A stretch of 63,618 bases of DNA, the filler included, from Octopus bimaculoides (lineage: Eukaryota): assembly GCF_001194135.2 (NCBI RefSeq). It is 8 parts of 8 records of this genome, joined end to end, with 100 filler letters (N's around TTAATTAATTAA, not from the genome) between each part and the next. Parts side by side here need not be neighbours in the genome. Positions count along the whole stretch, not along the records: positions 37,617 to 52,413 come from NC_069004.1; 7 more parts are not named here. One strand, 5' to 3'. Positions 37,517 to 50,735 of the stretch are shown here, one piece after another; position 1 is the first letter of the stretch; each line of letters opens with the position of its first letter. The notes below the pieces were generated by a model. The model searched no databases. It was not told where the DNA came from and saw only the letters and a list, made by a program, of their open reading frames with translations. A program made the position numbers and the translations under genes.

Positions 37517-38999
37517 NNNNNNNNNNNNNNNNNNNNNNNNNNNNNNNNNNNNNNNNNNNNTTAATTAATTAANNNNNNNNNNNNNNNNNNNNNNNNNNNN
37601 NNNNNNNNNNNNNNNNGGTATTTCTAGCAAGTCGAGTGACTACGTACATGCTACCTGCTTTACGCAACAGTTGTTTTGACGTTCCTTTTGTCGAGTCTCA
37701 ATTCATGTACAATTATTTTATTTAGCGAATTAAGTCTCGTTTTTGGTTGTTTTAATGGTGGTGGTGGTGGTGGTGGTGGTGATGGTGGTGGCGATGGTGG
37801 TGGCGGTGGTGAATAACAAAACAGCAAAGTAGGACGTAATCTTGTGACCTAAAATAGGTGTTTATATCGGTAAAAAATACATGATTACAAACAAAACACG
37901 CATACACACAACTTATATACACAACCTTAAATCGCAAAATATTCCATGCACCCTATCCTGGTCCATAGTAAGCGAGGCTACCCCATACAATGCAAACATT
38001 TGAAAATGTAAGTTATGTCTAAAAGAATCATTAATTATACTTAGCCTTCATAAATTCTCATTATTTAATAGATTCTCTGATGTAATTTATTCTTGTAAAC
38101 ATAGGTACTACTCATCTTTCATGCACCTTGCTAAATCAATGAAATCCCATAACTTCAAGTATCCATACCCAAAATGACCTTAAACAAAGTCAGCCAAGCA
38201 ATCTACTACTTAAAAAAAATACTACACCCCTCTTATTCTTTCCCATACACACATTTCCAAATTCTTCCAAATTCTTCTAATCCACTACTTTCCACTTCCC
38301 TCTTAGCCTCCCCACCCTTCCCACTTTCAAAAAGTACTTAACACTACTCCACTCCTTTGAAAACTACCCCCCACCCTCGTAAACATAAGGACACAGGAAA
38401 TGTGTCAAGGCCGACAGGAAGCGGTGCAGCTTCCTAATGCTAAATAGCAGTAGTATGATTCCCTTATTGGGACTGTCACGTTAAGTTGACAGTATACAAC
38501 TACTTTATCGTATCACTACTGCTTAAGTCTCTCTGAGAGATTTAGAAATGTATCATTTCTAATTTATATATATATACTTAATCGATTCNNNNNNNNNNNN
38601 NNNNNNNNNNNNNNNNNNNNNNNNNNNNNNNNNNNNNNNNNNNNNNNNNNNNNNNNNNNNNNNNNNNNNNNNNNNNNNNNNNNNNNNNNNNNNNNNNNNN
38701 NNNNNNNNNNNNNNNNNNNNNNNNNNNNNNNNNNNNNNNNNNNNNNNNNNNNNNNNNNNNNNNNNNNNNNNNNNNNNNNNNNNNNNNNNNNNNNNNNNNN
38801 NNNNNNNNNNNNNNNNNNNNNNNNNNNNNNNNNNNNNNNAAATTCCCTAATACAGGAAGTACAATTTTCTACTGCATTTTGGATTATCACACACACTTTA
38901 TTACAGATTAAAATTCCATCCATTTTTAACGATTTTTCTTTTACTTTTTGCTATGTTTGAAAGAATCGCTGAACTGATACTATAAACCACAAAAAAATA

Positions 39000-39256
39000 A
39001 AATAAATGCGCCCTTTTAAAGCCTAGCCAAGCTCATGGGCCCGGTTTCCCGGTTTCAATGGCGTATGTGTTCCCCAGCTGGACGGGATGCCAGTCCATCG
39101 CAGCGTTAATCATTTTTTGCCAGCTGAGTGGACTGGAGCAACGTGAAATGAAGTGTTTTGCTCAAGAACACAACGCGTCTCCCGGTCCAGGAATTGAAAC
39201 CACACTCTTACGATCATGGTGCTGACACCCTACCCACTAGGCCACGCGCCTCCACT
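39000..39256 (-). mobile_element. tRNA-derived SINE with the family D core but a different 3' tail
   Basis: Minus strand reads GGAGGCGCGTGGCCTAGTGG...TCTTGAGCAAAACACTTCATTTCACGTTGCTCCAGTCCACTCAGCTGGC, then GCGATGGACTGGCATCCCGTCCAGC...TTTAAAAGGGCGCATTTATT. Confidence 0.7.
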
Positions 39257-39470
39257 CTATAAATCACAAAACCATATCTACTTTAATTCTTTTACGTTCG
39301 TAGTTCGAATGTAGTCGAGGGCGACTTTCTGTTTCATTTCTCTGGAGTTGTTATAAGTACCAGTCATGTACTGGTATTCACTTACTCAATTAATATTCTC
39401 CCCTACAGGAAGAAATTGCTTAATTTCTTACATGCGAATTAATAATTCTTATAACAATTTTGTTTTTCAG

Positions 39471-39557
39471 GTTTGATGGTCACGTTTTCAATTCTTGGCA
39501 ATGGGTTAATATTCGTTTTGGGAGGCTTTATTAGCCAAATTCCTGTGGATCTTGAAG
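39471..39557 (+). CDS. SLCO: Internal exon of an SLCO/OATP organic anion transporter (87 nt, phase 1-1)
   Basis: Acceptor tgtttttcag and donor G|gtaaga. Translation (G)LMVTFSILGNGLIFVLGGFISQIPVDLE resembles the OATP segment G-x-x-x-x-x-x-x-x-G-P-x-x-G-x-x-L-G-G-x-x-x-x-x-Y-V-D. Confidence 0.75.
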
Positions 39558-39774
39558 GTAAGAACTATTCACTTCCACAAGGTTCTGACTTTTAGACTGT
39601 TTCTTTATTCTTTCTTTCTGATATATAACATCTTTTCTCATTCTACATTCCTCTTCGTCTACCTCCGTCTATCCAGCTTATCTAATTATCATACATACTT
39701 TGTCTATCTGTTGTCTACCGTCCTATATATTTATCTACCTACATATCAATCAATCAATCAATCAATCAATTATT

Positions 39775-39832
<58 letters not shown>

Positions 39833-39848
39833 TATGTATGTATGTATG

Positions 39849-40567
39849 TAGGGTGTTCGGACATGGTTTGACAATTTTTATGTCCACCTTATTTTTCAGA
39901 AACAGCTTGATGTATAGTTAGCGGCGTTGGAGAGCATAACGATTAAAGTTGTTGAGACAATTTAGCAGACATGGAGAACCGGCGACCATCTGAATATTGG
40001 CAAAGAGTTGTCTATATCACGATGAATCGCGCCGAGTATCATAGCGCTGACATCATGATTTCTGCTCAATGCTCTGCGAACACTACAAAGGCTGTAAGAC
40101 GTGACGTGGACCGTTGCAACGGAGATTACGAAGTCCTGACCAACAGGAAGAGACACAGCCTTCTGACTGCGTCCACACGCAGGAACTCATCCCCTCATCC
40201 TAGAATGGGGCCTCGGGCTCAATTCAAGCCGCTGTGTGAAGCTGTTGGAGACAGTGTTCAAACCCTGTCTGGAGAGGGTTATTGCTGGAAGGTCCTATGT
40301 GTGGCAGCAGGATCCGGATCCCTGCCATACCTGGTTGGCGGAGAATTCCTACGTCTTTACCAGCCCCAGGTTCTGTCTTCCTAATTTCTCCGATTGTAAT
40401 CCCATGAGTTAATACGTGCGAGGTGCAGTTGAGAAAGACACCAACCACTTTGCCAGTAACACCAAGTCCGAGCTGATGGTCAAGATCAAGGAGGTGTTCG
40501 AAGATCTTCCCAGAGACGCAATTGTTTCGGCACATCTAGCATCGATTCCTCTTGGGGGGACACTCAA
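39849..40567 (+). mobile_element. Internally deleted Tc1/mariner-superfamily (DD37D/maT-like) transposase relic
   Basis: Begins TA-GGGTGTTCGG. An N-terminal piece (MENRRPSEY...RKRHS) is joined directly to the C-terminal KLLETVFKPCLERVIAGRSYVWQQD...WLAEN...PNFSDCNPM...GAVEK (~GRPYVFQQD...WPPNSPDLNPLD). Stops and frameshifts are present. Confidence 0.7.
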
Positions 40568-41391
40568 NNNNNNNNNNNNNNNNNNNNNNNNNNNNNNNNN
40601 NNNNNNNNNNNNNNNNNNNNNNNNNNNNNNNNNNNNNNNNNNNNNNNNNNNNNNNNNNNNNNNNNNNNNNNNNNNNNNNNNNNNNNNNNNNNNNNNNNNN
40701 NNNNNNNNNNNNNNNNNNNNNNNNNNNNNNNNNNNNNNNNNNNNNNNNNNNNNNNNNNNNNNNNNNNNNNNNNNNNNNNNNNNNNNNNNNNNNNNNNNNN
40801 NNNNNNNNNNNNNNNNNNNNNNNNNNNNNNNNNNNNNNNNNNNNNNNNNNNNNNNNNNNNNNNNNNNNNNNNNNNNNNNNNNNNNNNNNNNNNNNNNNNN
40901 NNNNNNNNNNNNNNNNNNNNNNNNNNNNNNNNNNNNNNNNNNNNNNNNNNNNNNNNNNNNNNNNNNNNNNNNNNNNNNNNNNNNNNNNNNNNNNNNNNNN
41001 NNNNNNNNNNNNNNNNNNNNNNNNNNNNNNNNNNNNNNNNNNNNNNNNNNNNNNNNNNNNNNNNNNNNNNNNNNNNNNNNNNNNNNNNNNNNNNNNNNNN
41101 NNNNNNNNNNNNNNNNNNNNNNNNNNNNNNNNNNNNNNNNNNNNNNNNNNNNNNNNNNNNNNNNNNNNNNNNNNNNNNNNNNNNNNNNNNNNNNNNNNNN
41201 NNNNNNNNNNNNNNNNNNNNNNNNNNNNNNNNNNNNNNNNNNNNNNNNNNNNNNNNNNNNNNNNNNNNNNNNNNNNNNNNNNNNNNNNNNNNNNNNNNNN
41301 NNNNNNNNNNNNNNNNNNNNNNNNNNNNNNNNNNNNNNNNNNNNNNNNNNNNNNNNNNNNNNNNNNNNNNNNNNNNNNNNNNNNNNNNNNN

Positions 41392-41550
41392 CGCTGAAAA
41401 TTTCAGACCTAGAATTTATTAGAGAGTTAGGGATCTCAAATTTGAAGATAATCTGCATTCTTTCAGCTAAACAAGACCTCCAGTTATTCGGTCCATTAAC
41501 ATACGGTATGGATTTCTCAATTATTTTCCACTTAGTCACATTTGCTGCCA
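41392..41550 (-). mobile_element. Penelope-like element, C-terminal (GIY-YIG-associated) fragment
   Basis: TKWKIIEKSIPYVNGPNNWRSCLAERMQII...LINSRSEIFS (~IKWKI...PY-x-NG-x-x-x-C-x-LCL-x-EK...LN-x-RSE). Same family as 57724-57978. Confidence 0.7.
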
Positions 41551-42187
41551 CACCTTAGCCTATATCAGTACACACACACACACACACAGGACGGGCTTCT
41601 TTCAATTTCCGTTTACCAAATCTGCTCACAAGGCTTTGGTCGGTCCAAGGCTATAGAAGACCCTCGCCTAAGGCGCCATGCAGTGTGACTGAACTCGGAG
41701 CCATGTCGTTGGGAAGCAAACTTCTTACCACACTGCCACGCCTGCGCCTATATCAGTACACACACACACAGAGGCACACACACACACACCTGTCTGTTTT
41801 TCTATTATACCATCTATTTTTGTAACTATATATCTATTTGCTTATCTACTACTGCATGTTTTTTTTAATTTTTGTTATTAACCTATTAATCTGTACATCT
41901 GTCTATCTCTATGTCTACACATGTCTACCTGCTTATCTATTTGTCTGTTTATCTCTCTATTGTCTTTGTTTCTGAACCAGTTTGTATTTTCCTCGACTGT
42001 ACACAACGACATGCAGCATATTCATAAAATACGCTCCGTCACGTAACTGTTTTGTGTTTCGTATGGAATAATCTCTAAAGCTCTGAAATCCCTTTGGTTG
42101 ATATTAAATATTATTGTTGAGCACTTTGCATAGTTTTATCTCATTTTCGGTAAATTAACATATGTTCTGTGGAATAAGTGTGTGAGT

Positions 42188-42219
<32 letters not shown>

Positions 42220-43330
42220 AGAAGAGAGAGAGAGTGAACATGTGTGTGACTGAATATGTGTGTGTACTTGTGTGAGTGATTGAAAGAGTGTATATATGTG
42301 CGTGTGTACGTGTGTATGTATGTGTATGAGTATATGTATACGTGTATGTATGTGTGTATGTGTTTATGTGTGCGTATGTGTACATATGTGTATGTATGTG
42401 TGTTATTTCTTTACTACCTACAAGGGGCTACACACAGAGGGGACAAACAAGGACAGACAAACGGATTAAGTCGATTGTATCAACCACCAGTGCGTAACTG
42501 GTACTTATTTAATCGACCCCGAAAGGATGAAAGGCGAAGTCGACCTCGGCGGAATTTGAACTCAGAACGTAACGGCAGACGAAATACCGCTAAGCATTTC
42601 GCTCGGCGTGCTAACGTTTCATATTTCTTCATTGCCCACAAGGGGCTAAACATAGAGGGGACAATNNNNNNNNNNNNNNNNNNNNNNNNNNNNNNNNNNN
42701 NNNNNNNNNNNNNNNNNNNNNNNNNNNNNNNNNNNNNNNNNNNNNNNNNNNNNNNNNNNNNNNNNNNNNNNNNNNNNNNNNNNNNNNNNNNNNNNNNNNN
42801 NNNNNNNNNNNNNNNNNNNNNNNNNNNNNNNNNNNNNNNNNNNNNNNNNNNNNNNNNNNNNNNNNNNNNNNNNNNNNNNNNNNNNNNNNNNNNNNNNNNN
42901 NNNNNNNNNNNNNNNNNNNNNNNNNNNNNNNNNNNNNNNNNNNNNNNNNNNNNNNNNNNNNNNNNNNNNNNNNNNNNNNNNNNNNNNNNNNNNNNNNNNN
43001 NNNNNNNNNNNNNNNNNNNNNNNNNNNNNNNNNNNNNNNNNNNNNNNNNNNNNNNNNNNNNNNNNNNNNNNNNNNNNNNNNNNNNNNNNNNNNNNNNNNN
43101 NNNNNNNNNNNNNNNNNNNNNNNNNNNNNNNNNNNNNNNNNNNNNNNNNNNNNNNNNNNNNNNNNNNNNNNNNNNNNNNNNNNNNNNNNNNNNNNNNNNN
43201 NNNNNNNNNNNNNNNNNNNNNNNNNNNNNNNNNNNNNNNNNNNNNNNNNNNNNNNNNNNNNNNNNNNNNNNNNNNNNNNNNNNNNNNNNNNNNNNNNNAA
43301 TAATATATTTATATTTTTAATTAAACACGC

Positions 43331-43361
<31 letters not shown>

Positions 43362-43474
43362 TGTATGTATGTATGTATGTGTACATGTATGTATGCATTT
43401 ATGTATGTATGTATGTATGTATGTATGTATGTATGTATGTGTACATGTATATATGCATTTATGTATGTATGTAT

Positions 43475-43772
43475 GTATCCTTAAATCGCAGCCTTGGTTT
43501 CTGCCGGAGTCTCCTTCTATGCACAAGTTCTCCATATAGTATCTGCTTAGGAATCCTGCTATCCTTCATTCTAATAAGGCCTGTGATATGCAGGACACTG
43601 ACTGGGAGAACAATCCCTATCATCGCCACGGATGGAGGAAGCAGGTTAAAGAGGGGATCGACACTTTCGAGAGAGCACGTATCCAGCATGAAGAACTTAA
43701 GCGAGCTGCGCGAAAGCGCACGGCTCGTATAGTGAATGGGGAACGTTTGGTCTGCCATGTTAGAGGTCGTGT
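43475..43772 (+). mobile_element. RTE/BovB-like LINE 3' fragment with a 5' inversion
   Basis: 43475-43581 encodes GLIRMKDSRIPKQILYGEL...KPRLRFKDT on the minus strand. 43582-43772 encodes the next RTE segment, CDMQDTDWEN...WRKQVKEGIDTFE...KRAARK...VC, on the plus strand. Confidence 0.8.
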
Positions 43773-43773
43773 A

Positions 43774-44370
43774 TATCACCCATATCATAAGCAGTTGTCC
43801 AAAGTAATTATCGCAGTATTATCTACCGATGAGACATGATGTTGTAACTAGGACACTGTATAATGAGATCTGTTAGGTGGATAACCTTGAAGTCCAAGAA
43901 ACAGCCTACATATGGCAGAAAGAGTACCGGTGGAATGTCCCAGCGAAAACCTCAATAAAATGGAAATATAATAGGCCAGACATAGCGATTTGGGACAGGG
44001 ATGAGAAATTGTGTACAATAGTGGAAATTAGCTGCCCAGCTAATTTAACATAAAACTTAAAGATAGCGAAAAAGAAAAAACCTATGCCAAACTATTGAGA
44101 AATTTACAGTTACTCTACGCGGATTCAGGTTTATACCTGTAATTATTGGGGCACTGACATATTTAGCAAACTGTTTAAGCACCAGTCTTGAGAAATTAGG
44201 CTTCTCAAAACCAGAAAGAGAAGATTGATTTGAAGACTACAGATCCAAGCCATCACTGGAAGTGTAAAAATTTGTAAAACTTTCCGGAAACCTACCATTT
44301 AAGAATATATGTGCATGTCTAGACATGTAATTATATGCATGAGAATACATACATAAAACAAAACATACAA
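43774..44370 (+). mobile_element. 3' end of a restriction-like-endonuclease LINE (R4/Dong/NeSL type), degenerate
   Basis: ITHIISSCPK...YYLPMRHDVV...NRPDIAIWDRDEKLCTIVEISCP...KEKTYAKL...FIPVIIGALT...LEKLG: the end of a CCHC knuckle plus the RHD, PD and D/E-x-K RLE motifs. Confidence 0.8.
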
Positions 44371-44435
44371 ATCTCCACGTGCACTAGCTCGAACTACAGC
44401 ATGCGCGCGCTCGCAAAACTACACTGTGAATGTTA
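44370..44435 (+). promoter_or_regulatory. Candidate promoter elements upstream of the PDE ORF
   Basis: CpG-rich patch with CACGTG (E-box), GCATGCGCGCGC (NRF1-like) and two AACTACA motifs, about 0.6 kb upstream of the ATG. Motif match only. Confidence 0.25.
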
Positions 44436-45044
44436 GTGAAATTTCAATAAAAGAGCGTTGGATTTGGTAATTGTTTTACATTTAAATAAATATTTGGTGA
44501 TATGTTGAACTGGTTGAAGCGATATAGCACCAAACTAGATTCATTAAACATGGGTTTTAAACTTAAGGAAAGGAAAATACATCAAGATACCGGCGGTGAA
44601 GTTCCAGAAACTGTTGAGAATTGAATCAAATCCCAGCAATAATGTAGTGACGTTTTTCGTAGAGTTCGATTCGAGTCAGCATCAACTGTATCTTCGATCT
44701 GGTCATTATCAACAACACAGAACAGAATATGATTCAGTGTGAGGAACGTTTTGCCTTAGACCAATAAAACTAAAGGCAAAATATGCAGGTGTGTCATGCG
44801 CAACTCGATCGTTTGACGATTTTGAATATTTTGTCATAATTTTACTTACGTCACAACAGATTATACAGCGTGATTTCGAAGAGAAGCCACGAAAGCATGT
44901 CTGCCGACTGCTTCTAATTTCAAGTAGCGAAGACTGCTGGATTAAGAAAGAAAAAGAAAAAGAAATACGAAATTTTCATGAAACGTTTCCTAGAATACAG
45001 TAGGCTTCACTGAACATTGTTTGAAAATTAAACTTTAAAGAAAC

Positions 45045-47966
45045 ATGGGAACAGAACTTACTGAGGAAGAAGTGGATGGGTTCTTGATGGAGAATCCAAG
45101 ATTCGTTAGATCATGGCTCGCTGAACATGATCTAGGTAAATTGGGTGAACATTTATTCTTTAAACATGAGATACGAGAAGAAAAAGCACATGCTTTCATA
45201 GATTTCATAGGAAACGCCTTGTCTCGAAGGAAACCGACTCAAAAAGAGGAGAACGAAACTCTTACGGAAAATGAATTGTATAAAGAAGTTGGGAAAATTC
45301 TTAACAGCGAGCTTCATACAGATTCTCTATGCCATAGAGTTCTTCAGAAATTATGTACCTTACTTCGATGTGAAAAAGCAAGTCTTTTTTTGGCTCGAGG
45401 AGCGGGAAAAACTCAATATCTAATCTCGACCCTGTTTGATGTTACATCTGAATCTACTCTTGAAGAATCACTTCATACTGAAGAAAACGCCATACGCGTT
45501 CCCTTCGGAAAAGGTATTTCAGGATATGTAGCTCAGAGTAAGTGTTTACTAAATATTAAGGATGCATATCAGGATCCTCGTTTCTTATCTGATGTCGACG
45601 AAAAAACTGGATTTCGCACCAAAAGCATTCTATGTATGCCAATTCTAGACAGTGGTGATAATTTGTTAGCTGTCGCTCAAGTAATGAACAAAATAAATGA
45701 GGAATATTTTAATTCAGAAGACGAAAATATCTTCGAGAGGTTTTTGTCATTTTGTTCCATCAGTATGAACAACAGTGCTTTCTTTGAAAATTCTCTTGAA
45801 GAGCATGAGCGTCACAAGTTATTACTAAAACTAAATCGATGTATACTAAAATATCAAAATTCTCTAAAGAAACTAATGTCCGAAATTACCAAACTTGCCA
45901 TGGAAATGTTACAGTGTGAGAGTATCAGCATTTATTTGAGTGATCCGAAAAAGGATAACCTTTGCCCAACTGAATCTTCGAAAGTCTTTCAATTATTGAA
46001 AAGCGCTTCAGATATCTCAGAAGAAATTATAACACCGAACGTAAGAAAAGCAATTGAACGAAATATGAATAGTCAAAATATTTTAGATGTGTTTAATTCG
46101 GAGGAATTTACAGAGCATGATAGCATACATCTCGAAAGTAAGGTTGCAAGTTGGTTGCTTTGTTTAGCAATTAAAGATGCGAGCAATAATTTTGTCGGTT
46201 GGATCGTGTACATCAGAGATTCCAGAGATATTTTTAGTCGAAATGATATCAACATGATGGAAATATTTGCAATGTTCTGCGGTTTAGCTATCTATAATTG
46301 CCGTCTTTATGAAACTGCGGCAAAAACGCTAAGTCAGTTAGAATTTACAAACAGTGTGCTTAGCTATCATGCTACTTGTTATCCAGAAATTGTAGATCGT
46401 TTTTTAAATATGGAAATAGAATCTGTAAATAATTCTCAAATTTATCGATTCGACTTCAATGACTTCTTATATTCAGAGGATGACACTGTTTTGGTGGCTG
46501 TTAGCATATTTTTAGAGGCCAAAACATTATCCGTTCTCAACATATCTAAAGAATTATTATATAAGTGGATACTAACTGTTAAAAAGAACTATCGACCTGT
46601 CATCTATCATAATTGGCGTCATGCTATCAATGTCACTCAAATGATGTTTTGTATGTTGACTACTGGCAAATTGCAAATATATTTCACAGAATTTGATCGG
46701 ATTTGCCTATTGGTAGCTTCTTTGTGTCATGATCTTGATCATAGAGGATATAATAATTCATTTCAAGTGAAGACGAGATCTCCTCTTGCTCTTCTTTACA
46801 GTACGTCTGTGATGGAATACCATCATATAAGTCGATGCCTCATGATCTTAAAATATGAAGGCACAAATATTTTTCGAAACATCTCAGTTGAAAAATATCA
46901 GCAGGGGCTTATGTTTATAGAGAAAGCAATCCTTGCTACGGACCTCCTAATGTATTTTGAGAAAAGATACCTTTTCAAACAGAAAATAGAAATCGACGAC
47001 CAAACGTTGTCATCTCAAGAAAGTATTGATTTACTAATGTGCATGATGATGACTGCAGCTGATCTTTCAGCTATTACTAAGCCATGGGATATTCAAAGAA
47101 AGACTGCTATTATACTTGCAGCTGAATTCTTCGAACAAGGCGATCTGGAGAGCCATTTTACATATAATGTCATGCCTATGATGGATCGCAAAAAAAGACA
47201 CCAATTACCTAAAACGCAAGTTGGTTTTATTGATTTCGTGTGTTCAATGGTTTATAGACTTCTTTCTCAAGTGAGTAAGGAATTGCAACCTCTTTACGAT
47301 GGGATGCTCGGAAACAGAACTCATTGGTCTGATATTGTAGAAGGCAAAGAAGAATTTGATATTGATAGAGAGATCGAATTAGTTATAAATAACATTTCGC
47401 TGGAAAGTGCTATAGCAATCGCAAACAAACAATCACAACAAACGCTACGGTCACTTGACGTCGTGGAAGAAGGAGGAGAAGAGGAACAAAAACAAGAGGA
47501 AGAGGAAGAAGAACGAAAGCAAGAAGAAGAACAACAACAACAGCAAGGAGAAGAAGAAACGACTATTTTAACTGAAAAACGTGCCACATTTGGTCAAAAG
47601 GATATTCAGACTGATATTACAATTCCAACGTATATTGATCAACAGCACATTCTCTCGTCTTTTACGACAAAAACCGTTGAAACAAAAACCACAGCGAGTC
47701 AAACGGAAAATCTACTTCAAGACGTGTGTTCGGCGATGGTACAGACAGACGATTCATCTTTGAAGGAAGCAAAACATGTCACAGTTTTATTGCCTCACGA
47801 AAATCTGGTGCTTACATTGGGAGCATCCGGTAGCAAATTCATTACACTGCAAAAAGGAACTTTACCGCGAATATCCCATTGTGGTTATCATTATCATCAT
47901 TATTCAGAAAGAGGTTTACCAACAACACCCACCTCCGGTGGAAATGACCAAAATAGACAGTACTAG
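45045..47966 (+). CDS. PDE5A-like: Single-exon dual-GAF cyclic nucleotide phosphodiesterase (PDE5/PDE6/PDE11 group, closest to PDE5), 973 aa
   Basis: Uninterrupted ORF with Kozak context AAACATGG and an in-frame TAA at 45036-45038. GAF-A (about aa 91-243) has VPFGKGISGYVA, DPRF, TKSILCMPI and NKINEEYFNSEDE. The catalytic domain has YHNWRHA (46605), HDLDHRG, EYHH, AILATDL, DLSAITKPW, EFFEQGD and QVGFID. DLSAITKPW-x-IQ and QVGFID are PDE5-like. Confidence 0.95.
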   Translation: MGTELTEEEVDGFLMENPRFVRSWLAEHDLGKLGEHLFFKHEIREEKAHAFIDFIGNALSRRKPTQKEENETLTENELYKEVGKILNSELHTDSLCHRVLQKLCTLLRCEKASLFLARGAGKTQYLISTLFDVTSESTLEESLHTEENAIRVPFGKGISGYVAQSKCLLNIKDAYQDPRFLSDVDEKTGFRTKSILCMPILDSGDNLLAVAQVMNKINEEYFNSEDENIFERFLSFCSISMNNSAFFENSLEEHERHKLLLKLNRCILKYQNSLKKLMSEITKLAMEMLQCESISIYLSDPKKDNLCPTESSKVFQLLKSASDISEEIITPNVRKAIERNMNSQNILDVFNSEEFTEHDSIHLESKVASWLLCLAIKDASNNFVGWIVYIRDSRDIFSRNDINMMEIFAMFCGLAIYNCRLYETAAKTLSQLEFTNSVLSYHATCYPEIVDRFLNMEIESVNNSQIYRFDFNDFLYSEDDTVLVAVSIFLEAKTLSVLNISKELLYKWILTVKKNYRPVIYHNWRHAINVTQMMFCMLTTGKLQIYFTEFDRICLLVASLCHDLDHRGYNNSFQVKTRSPLALLYSTSVMEYHHISRCLMILKYEGTNIFRNISVEKYQQGLMFIEKAILATDLLMYFEKRYLFKQKIEIDDQTLSSQESIDLLMCMMMTAADLSAITKPWDIQRKTAIILAAEFFEQGDLESHFTYNVMPMMDRKKRHQLPKTQVGFIDFVCSMVYRLLSQVSKELQPLYDGMLGNRTHWSDIVEGKEEFDIDREIELVINNISLESAIAIANKQSQQTLRSLDVVEEGGEEEQKQEEEEEERKQEEEQQQQQGEEETTILTEKRATFGQKDIQTDITIPTYIDQQHILSSFTTKTVETKTTASQTENLLQDVCSAMVQTDDSSLKEAKHVTVLLPHENLVLTLGASGSKFITLQKGTLPRISHCGYHYHHYSERGLPTTPTSGGNDQNRQY

Positions 47967-47972
47967 AAAGAT

Positions 47973-47978
47973 AATAAA
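47973..47978 (+). terminator. Candidate polyadenylation signal of the PDE gene
   Basis: AATAAA begins 7 nt after the TAG stop, followed by T/GT-rich sequence. Confidence 0.5.
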
Positions 47979-48003
47979 GTATATATAAACGTTTATTGGT
48001 CCA

Positions 48004-48080
<77 letters not shown>

Positions 48081-48899
48081 NNNNNNNNNNNNNNNNNNNN
48101 NNNNNNNNNNNNNNNNNNNNNNNNNNNNNNNNNNNNNNNNNNNNNNNNNNNNNNNNNNNNNNNNNNNNNNNNNNNNNNNNNNNNNNNNNNNNNNNNNNNN
48201 NNNNNNNNNNNNNNNNNNNNNNNNNNNNNNNNNNNNNNNNNNNNNNNNNNNNNNNNNNNNNNNNNNNNNNNNNNNNNNNNNNNNNNNNNNNNNNNNNNNN
48301 NNNNNNNNNNNNNNNNNNNNNNNNNNNNNNNNNNNNNNNNNNNNNNNNNNNNNNNNNNNNNNNNNNNNNNNNNNNNNNNNNNNNNNNNNNNNNNNNNNNN
48401 NNNNNNNNNNNNNNNNNNNNNNNNNNNNNNNNNNNNNNNNNNNNNNNNNNNNNNNNNNNNNNNNNNNNNNNNNNNNNNNNNNNNNNNNNNNNNNNNNNNN
48501 NNNNNNATATATATATATATATATATATATATAAACATATACATGATGTTAAAATTTACAGTGAACATGGGTATACATATACATACATTAATTACGATGT
48601 GATATAATGTATATTCGCGCGCGCGCGCATACAGATATATGAAAGGTATAACACAAAAGAGAAATAACAAAACTAAATAGATGACGTAGTCCACTTGCCT
48701 TACACGCATTATTCATACTGATACACATACATATACACACACACATTAACACGCTGAATTGTTATGTAATGATCGTGTGGGGTGCATCCATTGATAAAGC
48801 CCGTGAATTTCCATCCTTAAGTTATAATTATTATATAAATGTAAATGTAAATGTATATATATATTTCATTCTTTTATTATCTTTGTTTTCTTCCTGCAG

Positions 48900-49064
48900 A
48901 ATTACCTTCGTCACTGAAAGGCCTTGTGACCAATCCAATCTTCGTTCTCATAGTAATCGGAGATTGTATTCTAGTGTTTTGTTTCAATGGCTTGTGGTCG
49001 TTCTCGGCAAAATATTTCGAGCACCAATTCTTCCTTCCTGTCTGGAAAACCAACTATATTTTAG
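48900..49064 (+). CDS. SLCO: Internal exon of an SLCO/OATP organic anion transporter (165 nt, phase 1-1)
   Basis: Acceptor ttttcttcctgcag and donor G|gtaaat. Translation (E)LPSSLKGLVTNPIFVLIVIGDCILVFCFNGLWSFSAKYFEHQFFLPVWKTNYILG matches the OATP pattern LP-x-x-LK-x-L-x-x-NP...F-x-x-KY-x-E-x-QF...N-x-x-x-G. Confidence 0.85.
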
Positions 49065-49132
49065 GTAAATATTGCGACTTTATTCATCGATATTGGAATA
49101 CTCTTAACGCGTGTGTGTGTTTGCGTTGTATG

Positions 49133-49177
<45 letters not shown>

Positions 49178-49180
49178 CCG

Positions 49181-49239
<59 letters not shown>

Positions 49240-49499
49240 GTGTGTGTGAACCAAGTATTACTAATTAAAATGAAATTCACAGCCTTTCACAAAAACTACG
49301 AAGTGCTAATAAATGACTTATAAAAAATGCACATGGAATATCCAAACAAAGGATCGATAAAAAATGGGATCATATTTTAAATAGGGCCAATCCAAAAGAA
49401 CAAGATTTCAAATACCAGAAAAACTTGATAAAGTATAATATTACAACGATCTAGATCCAGTGATGTTACTGCATCCTCGTTACCTGTTGTTTGTAATGT

Positions 49500-50735
49500 T
49501 GATGCTGCTGGTGTACCCAGCCAGCTCCTTGTCACCCCCATCTCTGTCTCCTTCATCTTTTTGACTCTCCGGTGGAGAGCTTACACGCTCCTTCCTCTTC
49601 CTCCTATTTACGACGGTGAATGTTTCTTATTCTCTCTCCACCACTTCTACATTCTGTCTTTGTTCTTCACACTACTGCCTCTGCTCCTCTCTGTCCTCCT
49701 TCTGGGGGCACCTTGCTTTCATGTACCCTTTTTGGCCGCATAGGAAACAGGTTGGAGGTCTGCCTTCCACCACAACTCTTAGTCTCACATCTTCCGGTAA
49801 AATAATCTCCTCTGTGATCTAATGCTAGCCTCTAAGGCTCACTTGTATGGCCACCTCAAGGCCATAACTCCACCAGTTAACTTTTTTGGTTCTTTTGATC
49901 TTCAATATTTTGGTTTCGTCTTCTATTCTGTGCATAACTGCTGTTACCAGCCATACTTCCTTAATTTCGAGGGGTATTCTGCCAATTCTTACTCTAGCCA
50001 CACGTTTGCCACAGTAAGTCGGCAGGAGTACGCAATCCTGTGTCTTTATCGCCACAATGGAGTGGTTTATGGTGTCCTCTCCGTTCCCGAACCTAATCTC
50101 CACTGTTCCATACTTCCTTCCTCGCGTGTAGAAGGTGGTCAGCTTCTTTATATCTTCGAGGCATTCCTCTGTTGCCTCTATTGAGGCAATCTCTATCTTT
50201 TTATAAGACGTGGATAGCGTTCTGTGTACCACTGTCCTCTTTGCTACATAGTTGATTAGTTCCTCTGGTGGGGTTAGCTTCAAACTGGCTCCTTCACTTT
50301 CTATCACTTTACTGCATTCTTTACATTTTCTGGGCTCTGTCTTGACCTCTCGCACTCCCAGGGTGTTGGTATTCAAACCTTTTGTTAGTTGTAGCTGATG
50401 CAAAAACTGGCAGCTGGTTCCTGTTTCATCTCGCCTCTCTTCTGTACTTCACCCATAAATGGGGAAGAAAACAATTACAAAAACAGGCGAAAACAGCGGC
50501 AATAATTTTAAAAAATTCAACAAATTCAACAAATCCAGGTTCACCCACACGGGCAGACCTTCCACAATACACTATAACACCAACTACTTCCATGGAATCA
50601 CAAGGACTTCAACCAGAAAAAAACACCACACTGTGCACCAAAAGTGAATGAAAACGCAACTCTGAAGAACACCATGACGAAATTCACTACAAGAACTGTC
50701 AAAGAAGTGGAGCTTCTTCGATTACACAAACGTAG
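49500..50735 (-). mobile_element. LINE ORF1 (RRM-like region plus gag-type zinc knuckle), degenerate
   Basis: Minus-strand ORF 49825-50403 (...RVARVRIGRIPLEIKEVWL...) is followed after a frameshift by LRVVVEGRPPTCFLCGQKGYMKARCP (C-x2-C-x4-[H>Y]-x4-C) at about 49709-49750. Confidence 0.7.

What the first reader, a model, noticed from the sequence alone, without database searches (positions are those of the whole stretch)
39471..49064. Intact intronless PDE5-like gene nested, same-strand, in an intron of an SLCO/OATP transporter gene
Seen: a complete 973-aa ORF with Kozak ATG and a proximal AATAAA lies between two splice-bounded OATP exons on the same strand, and all three are in one segment with no TTAATTAATTAA join between them. 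Known: animal PDE5/6/11 genes are normally multi-exon, and nested genes more often lie antisense to the host. Inference: a lineage-specific retrogene that has stayed intact under selection while neighbouring TE ORFs decayed. Its poly(A) site could also terminate host transcripts when it is active, which would favour mutually exclusive expression. Cephalopod photoreception uses Gq/PLC rather than PDE6, so a non-visual role such as testis/sperm is plausible.
Basis: partly seen in the sequence, partly recalled or inferred. Interest (0 to 1): 0.85.

Follow-up and report, generated by a model that had tools for sequence, protein, structure and literature searches.

The report
Single-exon PDE5-like gene inside SLCO intron
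An intact octopus cGMP-phosphodiesterase gene without introns really does sit, on the same strand, inside an intron of an organic-anion-transporter gene, but it is one copy of a large old octopod family of intronless PDE5-like genes rather than a lone new retrogene.

Summary
Window 45045-47966 (+) is an uninterrupted 973-aa GAF-GAF-PDEase ORF. It lies wholly in a gap-free block of Octopus bimaculoides chromosome CM046624.1. SLCO/OATP exons flank it on the same strand (39471-39557 and 48900-49064) with compatible splice phases.

A gap-free O. sinensis contig carries the orthologous PDE (84% aa identity, no indels). About 4.4 kb upstream of it, on the same strand, is the transporter's missing TM6 exon (WIGAWWIGF). 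In O. bimaculoides that exon falls in assembly gap 42666-43298. So the nesting is real and conserved, and the host intron runs from the TM6 exon to the TM7 exon.

The retrogene reading is only partly supported.
- Octopods carry many single-coding-exon PDE5/6-like genes: at least 8 in one O. vulgaris cluster, at least 6 in O. bimaculoides, and one checked in Argonauta. A bivalve homologue has about 18 exons.
- This copy is a roughly 3.4-kb duplicate of a cluster gene lying 0.65 Mb away (dS 0.27).
- It keeps about 565 nt of conserved upstream sequence.
- It lacks the last ~170 aa and the CaaX box, with no poly(A) remnant. That pattern looks more like DNA duplication than retroposition.

The ORF is maintained by selection (dN/dS 0.47; stop-free chance 0.0002). 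Interest is moderate.

The parts
39471..39557 (+). SLCO/OATP exon encoding TM5 (GLMVTFSILGNGLIFVLGGFISQIPVDLE). AG acceptor at 39469-70, GT donor at 39558-59, phase 1 at both ends. It is shared by the annotated N-terminal models P0122 and P0123.
42666..43298 (.). Assembly gap predicted to hide the SLCO TM6/loop exon (about 241 nt: DKGMTPSDPNWIGAWWIGFLF...KEKLK, phase 1/1). The exon is seen in O. sinensis at L003:5392-5632. L003:6057-6104 matches window 43303-43350, immediately to the right of the gap.
44476..45044 (+). About 565 nt upstream block shared with the paralogue P0003 locus. Identity is 88-91% across most of the last ~450 nt, higher than across the CDS. Homology stops abruptly at about 44476. 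Putative own promoter or 5'UTR, with conserved CCAAT (44761) and a CRE-like TTACGTCA (44845).
45045..47966 (+). Single-exon CDS of the 973-aa PDE5/6-type phosphodiesterase (stop TAG at 47964-66).
45321..45764 (+). GAF-A domain (aa 93-240). The N-K...F...D-E cGMP-binding motif is conserved against human PDE5A.
45861..46292 (+). GAF-B domain (aa 273-416). The Pfam match is weak.
46605..47303 (+). PDEase_I catalytic domain (aa 521-753). The HNWRH, HDLDHRG, EYHH, ATD, DLSAITKPW, EFFEQGD and QVGFID motifs are all present.
47845..47966 (+). Novel C-terminal end. Homology to the paralogue fades at about 47845-47890. The ORF then reads into local sequence up to the stop. The paralogues' last ~170 aa, including the CaaX box, are absent.
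47973..47978 (+). AATAAA hexamer 7 nt after the stop, a candidate poly(A) signal. It is followed by (TG)36 and gap 48081-48506.
48900..49064 (+). SLCO/OATP exon encoding TM7 (ELPSSLKGLVTNPIFV...KTNYIL). Phase 1 at both ends. It is not in any annotated model. It splices in frame to the next OATP exon at L001:19710-19901 (window-equivalent 54754-54945, outside the piece).

Best explanation
What it is:
- The locus is in Octopus bimaculoides, chromosome CM046624.1, at about 11.08 Mb.
- It holds a functional-looking cGMP-type phosphodiesterase gene with one coding exon. The architecture is GAF-A, GAF-B and a class-I PDE catalytic domain, closest to PDE5A.
- The gene lies on the same strand inside the intron between the TM6/loop exon and the TM7 exon of one SLCO/OATP transporter gene.
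- The current annotation wrongly splits that transporter into two gene models, because the TM6 exon is lost in an assembly gap.

How it arose:
- The PDE is one member of an old, fast-evolving octopod family of single-exon PDE5/6-type genes, most of them in a tandem cluster.
- The family most likely started with one ancient retroposition from a multi-exon gene of about 18 exons, then grew by DNA duplication.
- This copy is a dispersed duplicate of about 3.4 kb from the P0003/P0004 lineage, made shortly before the O. bimaculoides / O. vulgaris-sinensis split.
- It brought about 565 nt of conserved upstream sequence, inferred to be its own promoter or 5'UTR.
- It lost the ancestral C-terminal tail with the CaaX prenylation box. 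It now ends in new sequence with a nearby AATAAA.

How it probably works:
- It would hydrolyse cGMP under allosteric control by GAF-A.
- It would be soluble rather than prenyl-anchored (inferred).

Shown versus inferred:
- Shown here: ORF integrity, domain motifs, nesting in two species, selection on the ORF, the family structure, and the boundaries of the duplicated block.
- Inferred: promoter function, expression (possibly testis), substrate, and any transcriptional interference with the host gene.
For: ORF and domains:
- The ORF and its domains are established.
- The window matches GCA_001194135.2 exactly, and the PDE gene span equals three times its protein length.

Host gene:
- The N-terminal half P0122 ends at the 39471-39557 exon by reading through the donor to a stop.
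- Against human OATP1B1, the first exon ends at about residue 240 and the second begins at about residue 327. About 85 aa carrying the WxGxWW signature are missing.
- That segment is absent from the assembled intron.
- It is found in O. sinensis at L003:5392-5632, in the matching splice phase, on the same strand, 4.4 kb upstream of the PDE orthologue.
- Collinearity places it in gap 42666-43298.
- The TM7 exon joins in frame to the TM8/9 exon and then to the Kazal-domain exon.

Selection (window copy against O. sinensis, 730 codons):
- dS 0.179, dN 0.084, dN/dS 0.47, Fisher p=2e-6.
- No indels in the CDS, against 13 indel events in 1.27 kb of upstream sequence.
- Random placement of the 210 observed substitutions leaves the ORF stop-free in only 0.02% of trials.

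Family:
- Single-exon paralogues are seen.
- Mactra has about 18 exons over 57 kb.
- In the tree, the window copy plus O. sinensis are sister to P0003 plus P0004 (bootstrap 100), all octopod copies form one clade (100), and Argonauta is nested within it.

Duplicate boundaries and dS of 0.27 to P0003 come. Loss of the CaaX box is shown.
Against: - No transcript evidence was available for either gene. No spliced SLCO read spanning the PDE was seen, and no PDE mRNA ends were seen.
- The gap between the PDE and the TM7 exon (48081-48506) is not bridged by any other sequence.
- The TM6 exon is inferred for O. bimaculoides from O. sinensis. It was not read.
- The 10 kb upstream of the O. sinensis PDE stops short of the TM5 exon. 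That contig ends inside the PDE, so the downstream host exon is unseen there.
- Amino-acid constraint is weak. CDS nucleotide identity (90.4%) is no higher than in the upstream flank (91.8%).
- The C-terminal truncation could mark the start of decay.
- An O. vulgaris orthologue was not found among annotated proteins.
- The trees are neighbour-joining only.
Confidence: 0.72

Rival explanations
1. This copy is itself a recent, lineage-specific retrogene, reverse-transcribed from the spliced mRNA of a multi-exon PDE5/11 parent and inserted into the SLCO intron.
For: - The CDS has no introns.
- A bivalve homologue has about 18 exons.
- Octopus PDE11 has annotated splice isoforms.
Against: - The nearest relative, P0003 (84.7% nt identity, dS 0.27), is itself single-exon and lies on the same chromosome.
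- PDE11 is in a different, well-supported clade.
- Homology to P0003 extends about 565 nt upstream of the ATG.
- The copy is 3'-truncated and has no A-tract at the break or after the AATAAA.
- All checked octopod family members are single-exon, including Argonauta, so intron loss predates this copy.
Confidence: 0.07
2. This copy was made by retroposition, but from the mRNA of the intronless parent P0003-like gene. That mRNA would have had a long 5'UTR and premature internal polyadenylation.
For: - The shared upstream block ends abruptly at about -565, which could be a transcription start.
- The copy landed 0.65 Mb away from its parent rather than in tandem.
Against: - There is no poly(A) remnant at the 3' homology boundary and no recognisable target-site duplication.
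- The upstream block is more conserved than the CDS, as expected of promoter sequence copied as DNA.
- 3' truncation is atypical of retrocopies.
Confidence: 0.2
3. The PDE is not nested. As in the current NCBI annotation, the two SLCO halves are separate genes or relics of a transporter broken by the insertion, and the PDE lies between them.
For: - The annotation gives a 323/324-aa N-terminal model that ends by donor read-through, and a separate 315-aa C-terminal model.
- No annotated protein in any species joins them.
- No transcript data were available.
Against: - The halves are exactly complementary (TM1-5, then TM7-12), collinear and on the same strand.
- The missing TM6 exon exists in O. 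sinensis in the right place and phase.
- The TM5, TM6, TM7 and TM8/9 exons all join in frame through consensus splice sites.
- The C-terminal model starts with an implausible ATG exon at window 51718 and skips the good TM7 exon.
- All exons seen are open.
Confidence: 0.12
4. Scaffolding artefact. The PDE block and the SLCO exons are misjoined across the N gaps.
For: Three gaps with microsatellite edges separate the parts. Gap 48081-48506 is not bridged.
Against: - An independent, gap-free O. sinensis contig has an SLCO exon and the PDE on one molecule, and it is collinear with window 41577-47235.
- A chance misjoin would be unlikely to place the next exon of the same gene in the correct order, strand and phase.
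Confidence: 0.04
5. The copy is a truncated duplicate drifting towards pseudogene status, not a maintained gene.
For: - The CaaX tail present in all paralogues is lost.
- dN/dS is 0.47, and the CDS is no more conserved than its flank.
- No O. vulgaris orthologue was found among annotated proteins.
Against: - There are no stops and no indels over 730 codons in two species, where about 9 stops are expected by chance (P=0.0002), while the upstream flank has 13 indels.
- All catalytic and GAF-A motifs are intact.
- dN/dS is lower than for the parental pair P0003/P0004 (0.67-0.76).
Confidence: 0.1

Closest known systems
Human PDE5A (PDB 3bjc, 9lss), cGMP-specific GAF-GAF phosphodiesterase
   Same: The architecture is the same: GAF-A, GAF-B and a class-I catalytic domain, aligned over residues 81-774 at E=4e-142. 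The metal-binding and substrate motifs and the GAF-A NKFDE-type motif are conserved.
   Different: About 40% identity only. The human gene has about 21 exons (from my own knowledge), whereas this one has a single coding exon. This protein has a long, low-complexity, fast-evolving C-terminal tail. Substrate specificity was not tested.
Invertebrate PDE5/6-type genes ('cGMP-specific PDE-like'; Drosophila Pde6 type) ending in a CaaX box
   Same: It falls in the same clade as the 'cGMP-specific PDE-like' proteins of molluscs, echinoderms and arthropods. Most of these, and all octopod paralogues that reach their C-terminus, end in CxxX.
   Different: This copy lacks the last ~170 aa and the CaaX box, so prenylation is not expected. 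Bivalve (Mactra, about 18 exons) and echinoderm genes are multi-exon.
Octopus bimaculoides paralogue P0003 (1091 aa) and O. vulgaris P0004, in the tandem cluster of single-exon PDE5-like genes
   Same: Both have a single coding exon. They show 67% aa and 84.7% nt identity to the window copy, share about 565 nt of upstream block, lie on the same chromosome, and form the sister lineage with bootstrap 100.
   Different: P0003 sits in a tandem array at 10.43 Mb with no SLCO exons nearby. It retains the full tail and its CMIS box.
Same-strand intronic nested genes, such as F8B or F8A in intron 22 of human F8, and retrogene-derived testis genes such as PGK2 (from my own knowledge, not tested here)
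   Same: An intronless gene with its own regulatory sequence sits inside an intron of an unrelated host gene. The family probably derives from a retrocopy and may be male-biased (lead: PMC11202624).
   Different: No expression data exist for this locus. This copy looks DNA-duplicated rather than freshly retroposed.
SLCO/OATP transporters (human OATP1B1, 8hnd; SLCO2A1) as the host gene
   Same: There are Pfam OATP hits on both halves. Alignment to OATP1B1 gives E=1e-27, with the Kazal-like loop and the WxGxWWxG signature present in the O. sinensis exon.
   Different: A large 283-aa first coding exon is present in two tandem alternative copies. No orthologue was identified in other species.

Membership tests
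Class-I cyclic-nucleotide phosphodiesterase, GAF-containing PDE5/6/11 group | PDEase_I catalytic domain with the HD-type metal-binding motifs and the invariant glutamine | tested here: met
   PF00233 matches at E=9e-79 over the full model. HNWRH, HDLDHRG, EYHH, ATD, DLSAITKPW, EFFEQGD and QVGFID all align to PDE5A.
Class-I cyclic-nucleotide phosphodiesterase, GAF-containing PDE5/6/11 group | Tandem N-terminal GAF domains, with an NKFDE-type cGMP-binding motif in GAF-A | tested here: met
   PF01590 gives two stretches, and GAF-B is weak. 'vmNKi..neeyFnsEDE' aligns to PDE5A 'aiNKk...gtFtekDE'.
Class-I cyclic-nucleotide phosphodiesterase, GAF-containing PDE5/6/11 group | cGMP-selective hydrolysis | not testable with these tools
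   This needs an enzyme assay. The sequence is closest to PDE5A, then PDE6, then PDE2 and PDE10.
Invertebrate PDE5/6-type (prenylated) subfamily | C-terminal CaaX prenylation box | tested here: not met
   The protein ends ...GGNDQNRQY. The paralogues end CMIS, CVIS, CKIS, CTIS, CVIC or CMIF. No trace of the tail lies downstream.
Retrogene (processed retrocopy) | Loss of all parental introns relative to a multi-exon parent | tested here: inconclusive
   The copy has a single coding exon, but so does its nearest relative. At family level the contrast with the ~18-exon Mactra gene holds.
Retrogene (processed retrocopy) | 3' poly(A) tract remnant and flanking target-site duplications | tested here: not met
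   There is no A-run at the 3' homology boundary or after the AATAAA. The flank runs into (TG)36 and a gap. Target-site duplications were not identifiable.
Retrogene (processed retrocopy) | Homology to the parent confined to the mature mRNA | tested here: inconclusive
   Homology starts about 565 nt upstream of the ATG and ends inside the parent's CDS. The parent's transcription start is unknown.
Nested (intronic) gene, same strand as its host | Exons of one host gene on both sides, collinear, on the same strand and splice-compatible | tested here: met
   The TM5 exon (39471-39557), the TM6 exon (O. sinensis L003:5392-5632) and the TM7 exon (48900-49064) are all phase 1, followed by the TM8/9 and Kazal exons.
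Nested (intronic) gene, same strand as its host | Host transcripts spliced across the nested gene | not testable with these tools
   No RNA data were accessible. No annotated or Logan-derived protein joins the two halves.
Nested (intronic) gene, same strand as its host | Arrangement conserved in a second species | tested here: met
   O. sinensis contig VCDQ01010451.1 has an SLCO TM6 exon 4.4 kb upstream of the PDE orthologue on the same strand. The downstream side is unseen because the contig ends.
SLCO/OATP transporter (host gene) | OATP domain, WxGxWWxG signature and Kazal-like extracellular loop | tested here: met
   PF03137 and PF07648 hit the flanking models. OATP1B1 aligns. WIGAWWIGF is present in L003. 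CNCDVRQYFPICGSDQQNYFSPCHAGC is present. The signature exon is not readable in O. bimaculoides because it falls in a gap.

The most novel reading that the evidence does not exclude
Octopods may have replaced the ancestral multi-exon PDE5/6-type gene with a retrogene. That retrogene then expanded into a fast-evolving family of 8 to 10 or more single-exon paralogues, possibly male-germline genes.

One paralogue lost its prenylation tail and became soluble. It was captured in an SLCO intron on the same strand, where its own promoter and poly(A) site make PDE and transporter expression mutually exclusive.

I found no report of this expansion in the literature available to me.
Probability: 0.25. Interest if true: 0.55.

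Novelty: new member of a known kind. Interest (0 to 1): 0.4.

Why it matters
- It corrects the annotation of this locus. One SLCO gene is split into two models because an exon sits in an assembly gap and an unrelated gene sits in the intron.
- It documents a conserved same-strand nested gene pair in Octopus.
- It exposes a sizeable octopod expansion of intronless, rapidly evolving PDE5/6-type genes that the searched cephalopod genome papers do not mention.
- cGMP signalling is implicated in octopus synaptic plasticity (the NO/LTP preprints surfaced) and possibly in male reproduction, so a diversified set of cGMP phosphodiesterases is a reasonable target for expression and functional work.
- As a single locus, however, it is an ordinary product of gene duplication.

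Tried and rejected
- A homologue search with only the two flanking exon peptides (85 aa) found nothing. A longer 194-aa exon concatenate found only O. bimaculoides' own partial models and no orthologue in other species.
- A regex scan for the OATP WW signature in the assembled intron 39558-48900 found none. This led to the O. sinensis contig, where the exon was found.
- tblastn of the paralogues' C-terminal tails against the locus found nothing.
- tblastn for OATP exons near the other PDE copies (O. bimaculoides and O. vulgaris clusters, Argonauta, Haliotis) found none. Nesting is therefore specific to this copy.
- Pfam on small ORFs in the intron gave nothing significant.
- tRNA and Rfam scans found nothing.
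- The look-up of the Saccostrea isoform gene failed because only the longest product is on record.
- Literature searches for octopus or cephalopod PDE expansions, retrogenes, or the SRA run behind P0007 returned nothing relevant except PMC11202624.
- A LINE 3'-transduction origin was considered and dropped, because homology with the parent locus stops cleanly at about -565 with no shared element upstream.
Full report
**Origin and gap test**

The piece (window 37617-52413) matches Octopus bimaculoides assembly GCA_001194135.2, chromosome CM046624.1, at about 11.08 Mb, with zero mismatches. It contains N gaps at 38589-38839, 40568-41391, 42666-43298 and 48081-48506.

The 973-aa ORF at 45045-47966 (+) lies wholly inside gap-free block 43299-48080, so its continuity does not depend on any gap.

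**The PDE ORF**

- Pfam finds GAF (aa 93-240), a second weak GAF (aa 273-416) and PDEase_I (aa 521-753, E=9e-79).
- The best solved structure is full-length human PDE5A (3bjc, E=4e-142, aligned over aa 81-774), followed by PDE6, PDE2 and PDE10.
- In that alignment the catalytic motifs HNWRH, HDLDHRG, EYHH, ATD, DLSAITKPW, EFFEQGD and QVGFID are all present, as is the GAF-A N-K...F...D-E motif.
- The start context is aaacATGg, with an in-frame TAA two codons upstream.
- The stop is followed after 7 nt by AATAAA, then (TG)36, then a gap.
- AATAAA occurs about once per 0.9 kb on this strand, so it is only suggestive.

**The host transporter**

Two OATP-like exons flank the ORF on the + strand, both in phase 1:
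- cag|39471-39557|gtaaga, encoding GLMVTFSILGNGLIFVLGGFISQIPVDLE.
- cag|48900-49064|gtaaat, encoding ELPSSLKGLVTNPIFV...KTNYIL.

The annotation on this assembly has two separate OATP models.
- A 323/324-aa N-terminal model (P0122) ends by reading through the 39557 donor to a stop.
- A 315-aa C-terminal model starts at an unconvincing ATG at window 51718 and skips the 48900-49064 exon.

The 48900-49064 exon joins in frame to the next OATP exon (L001:19710-19901), and that exon joins in frame to the Kazal-loop exon.

Aligned to human OATP1B1, the upstream exon ends at about residue 240 and the downstream exon begins at about residue 327. About 85 residues are therefore missing, including TM6 with the family signature WxGxWWxG. 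No such exon exists in the assembled sequence between the two exons.

**The hidden exon and conservation of the nest**

The O. sinensis orthologue of the PDE (P0002, 84% identity) lies on a gap-free 16-kb contig (L003). There it is again a single uninterrupted reading frame, cut off by the contig end.

L003 is collinear with window 41577-47235. At L003:5392-5632 it has a perfect OATP TM6/loop exon: ccag|DKGMTPSDPNWIGAWWIGFLF...KEKLK|gtgaaa. This exon is on the PDE strand, 4.4 kb upstream of the PDE. It is phase 1 at both ends, which is exactly what is needed to join 39557 to 48900.

L003:6057-6104 matches window 43303-43350, the first bases after gap 42666-43298. The exon therefore falls in that gap in O. 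bimaculoides. Three conclusions follow:
- The host is one SLCO gene, split by the annotation because an exon is unassembled.
- The arrangement predates the split between the two species.

Gap 48081-48506 remains unbridged. The downstream link rests on the scaffold and on exon order, strand and phase.

**Selection**

Over 730 aligned codons between O. bimaculoides and O. sinensis:
- dS=0.179, dN=0.084, dN/dS=0.47, Fisher p=2e-6.
- The CDS has no indels, while the 1.27 kb upstream has 13 indel events.
- Placing the 210 observed substitutions at random gives a mean of 8.8 stop codons. The ORF stays stop-free in only 0.02% of trials.

Constraint on amino acids is weak. CDS identity is 90.4% against 91.8% in the flank, and differences by codon position are 71, 52 and 87. 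The parental pair P0003/P0004 shows even weaker constraint, with dN/dS of 0.67-0.76. The whole family evolves fast, but this ORF is clearly being kept open.

**Not a lone retrogene: an octopod family of single-exon PDE5/6-type genes**

*O. bimaculoides*
- It has at least three such genes in tandem at 10.43 Mb on the same chromosome, including P0003 (1091 aa, gene span 3276 bp).
- Further copies, P0140 and P0284, lie on that chromosome.

*O. vulgaris*
- It has at least eight within 28.737-28.846 Mb of OX597837.1.
- Each fully contained gene has a span equal to three times its protein length.

*Other species and controls*
- An Argonauta hians member is also single-exon.
- The method does detect introns: the SLCO model spans 14 kb for 323 aa, and the Mactra antiquata homologue spans 57 kb with about 18 coding exons.
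- Octopus has a separate PDE11 with annotated isoforms on another chromosome.

*Neighbour-joining tree (708 columns, 200 bootstraps)*
- The window copy groups with the O. sinensis copy (100).
- That pair is sister to P0003 plus P0004 (100).
- All octopod copies form one clade (100), with Argonauta nested inside it. The family therefore predates the Octopus/Argonauta split.
- Three unnamed sequences (P0007, P0127, P0135) join the clade (100).
- A single-exon Haliotis gene groups with multi-exon bivalve genes (100), which suggests an independent event.

The simplest history is one old retroposition followed by DNA duplications.

**How this copy arose**

- dS to P0003 is only 0.27, against 0.12-0.18 between orthologues. 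The duplication is therefore only a little older than the species split.
- Nucleotide homology to the P0003 locus starts abruptly about 565 nt upstream of the ATG (window ~44476).
- Identity is 88-91% across most of the last ~450 nt of upstream sequence, which is higher than the 84.7% of the CDS.
- Homology fades out at window ~47845-47890, inside the tail-coding region.
- The parent's last ~170 codons, including the CaaX box carried by all paralogues and by most invertebrate PDE5/6-type proteins, have no counterpart.
- There is no A-tract at the break.

A copy that keeps a conserved 5' flank, is truncated at the 3' end and lacks a poly(A) tail fits a DNA-level partial duplication better than a processed retrocopy. 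A retrocopy of an intronless parent mRNA with a long 5'UTR cannot be excluded.

The protein's new C-terminus and the nearby AATAAA come from local sequence.

**Function (inferred)**

The product should be a GAF-regulated cGMP phosphodiesterase that, unlike its paralogues, is not prenylated. The conserved upstream block is the likely promoter or 5'UTR, so the gene probably drives its own expression from inside the host intron.

One paper reports an O. sinensis 'cGMP-specific PDE-like' gene expressed in testis but not in ovary (FPKM 13.9 against 0; PMC11202624). Which paralogue that is remains unknown.

Interference between the PDE poly(A) site and host transcription is plausible but untested.

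**Novelty**

I found no report of this family or this locus. Nested genes and retro-derived gene families are well-known phenomena. This is a new, well-documented instance plus an annotation correction, and the family expansion is the more interesting by-product.

Noticed in passing
window 47845-47966; comparison with L002:12760-13276: The window PDE lacks the C-terminal ~170 aa and the CaaX box (CMIS, CVIS, CKIS and so on) found in every octopod paralogue that reaches its end and in most invertebrate PDE5/6-type proteins. It should not be prenylated.
   Followed up: yes
L005:10001-10849 and L005:13596-14402 (upstream of the piece, same chromosome): The SLCO gene's large first coding exon (283 aa, TM1-4) is present twice in tandem at 80% aa identity. 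Models P0122 and P0123 each use one copy and share the 39471-39557 exon. They look like mutually exclusive alternative first exons.
   Followed up: partly
window 39558-39595 and 51718: There are two annotation artefacts. The N-terminal SLCO model reads through the 39557 donor to a stop (GKNYSLPQGSDF*). The C-terminal model begins at an isolated ATG (MKNVFMNLL...) and skips the bona fide exon at 48900-49064.
   Followed up: yes
window 47429-47544: A GA-rich insertion encodes an E/Q-rich low-complexity stretch in the PDE tail. It is absent from paralogues P0003 and P0004 (TRF array 47478-47547).
   Followed up: partly
window 44761-44765 and 44845-44852: A CCAAT box and a CRE-like TTACGTCA lie about -284 and -200 from the ATG, inside the upstream block, and both are conserved with the P0003 locus. 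Possible promoter elements, not tested.
   Followed up: no
window 39971-40567 (+): A decayed ORF with stop codons looks by eye like the C-terminal part of a mariner/Tc1 transposase (...QQDPDPCH...PNFSDCNPM...). It runs into gap 40568. Pfam gave no significant hit on its pieces.
   Followed up: partly
window 41577-41761, 41883-41958, 42404-42620, 52095-52413; L003:1720-4992: Interspersed and tandem repeats of about 76-nt and 180-nt units surround gap 42666-43298. They are greatly expanded in the O. sinensis intron, which probably explains why the assembly broke there.
   Followed up: partly
L004, L006, L007 (O. vulgaris OX597837.1, 28.737-28.846 Mb): The cluster holds at least eight single-exon PDE5-like genes on both strands, interspersed with reverse-transcriptase-like ORFs. 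It includes very recent duplicates (94% aa identity between the 1026-aa and 1033-aa genes) and an 807-aa copy lacking GAF hits.
   Followed up: partly
L011:1001-3655 (Haliotis rufescens JALGQA010000083.1): An abalone PDE5-like gene (884 aa) also has a single coding exon, yet it groups with multi-exon bivalve genes. This suggests independent intron loss or retroposition in gastropods.
   Followed up: partly
L008-L010 (Logan SRR11869384, SRR11869385, SRR11869391); P0127 and P0135 (ENA): Unnamed 1037-1273-aa relatives join the octopod clade with bootstrap 100, and P0007 ends in CAIA. They are probably other cephalopods. The organism could not be identified.
   Followed up: partly
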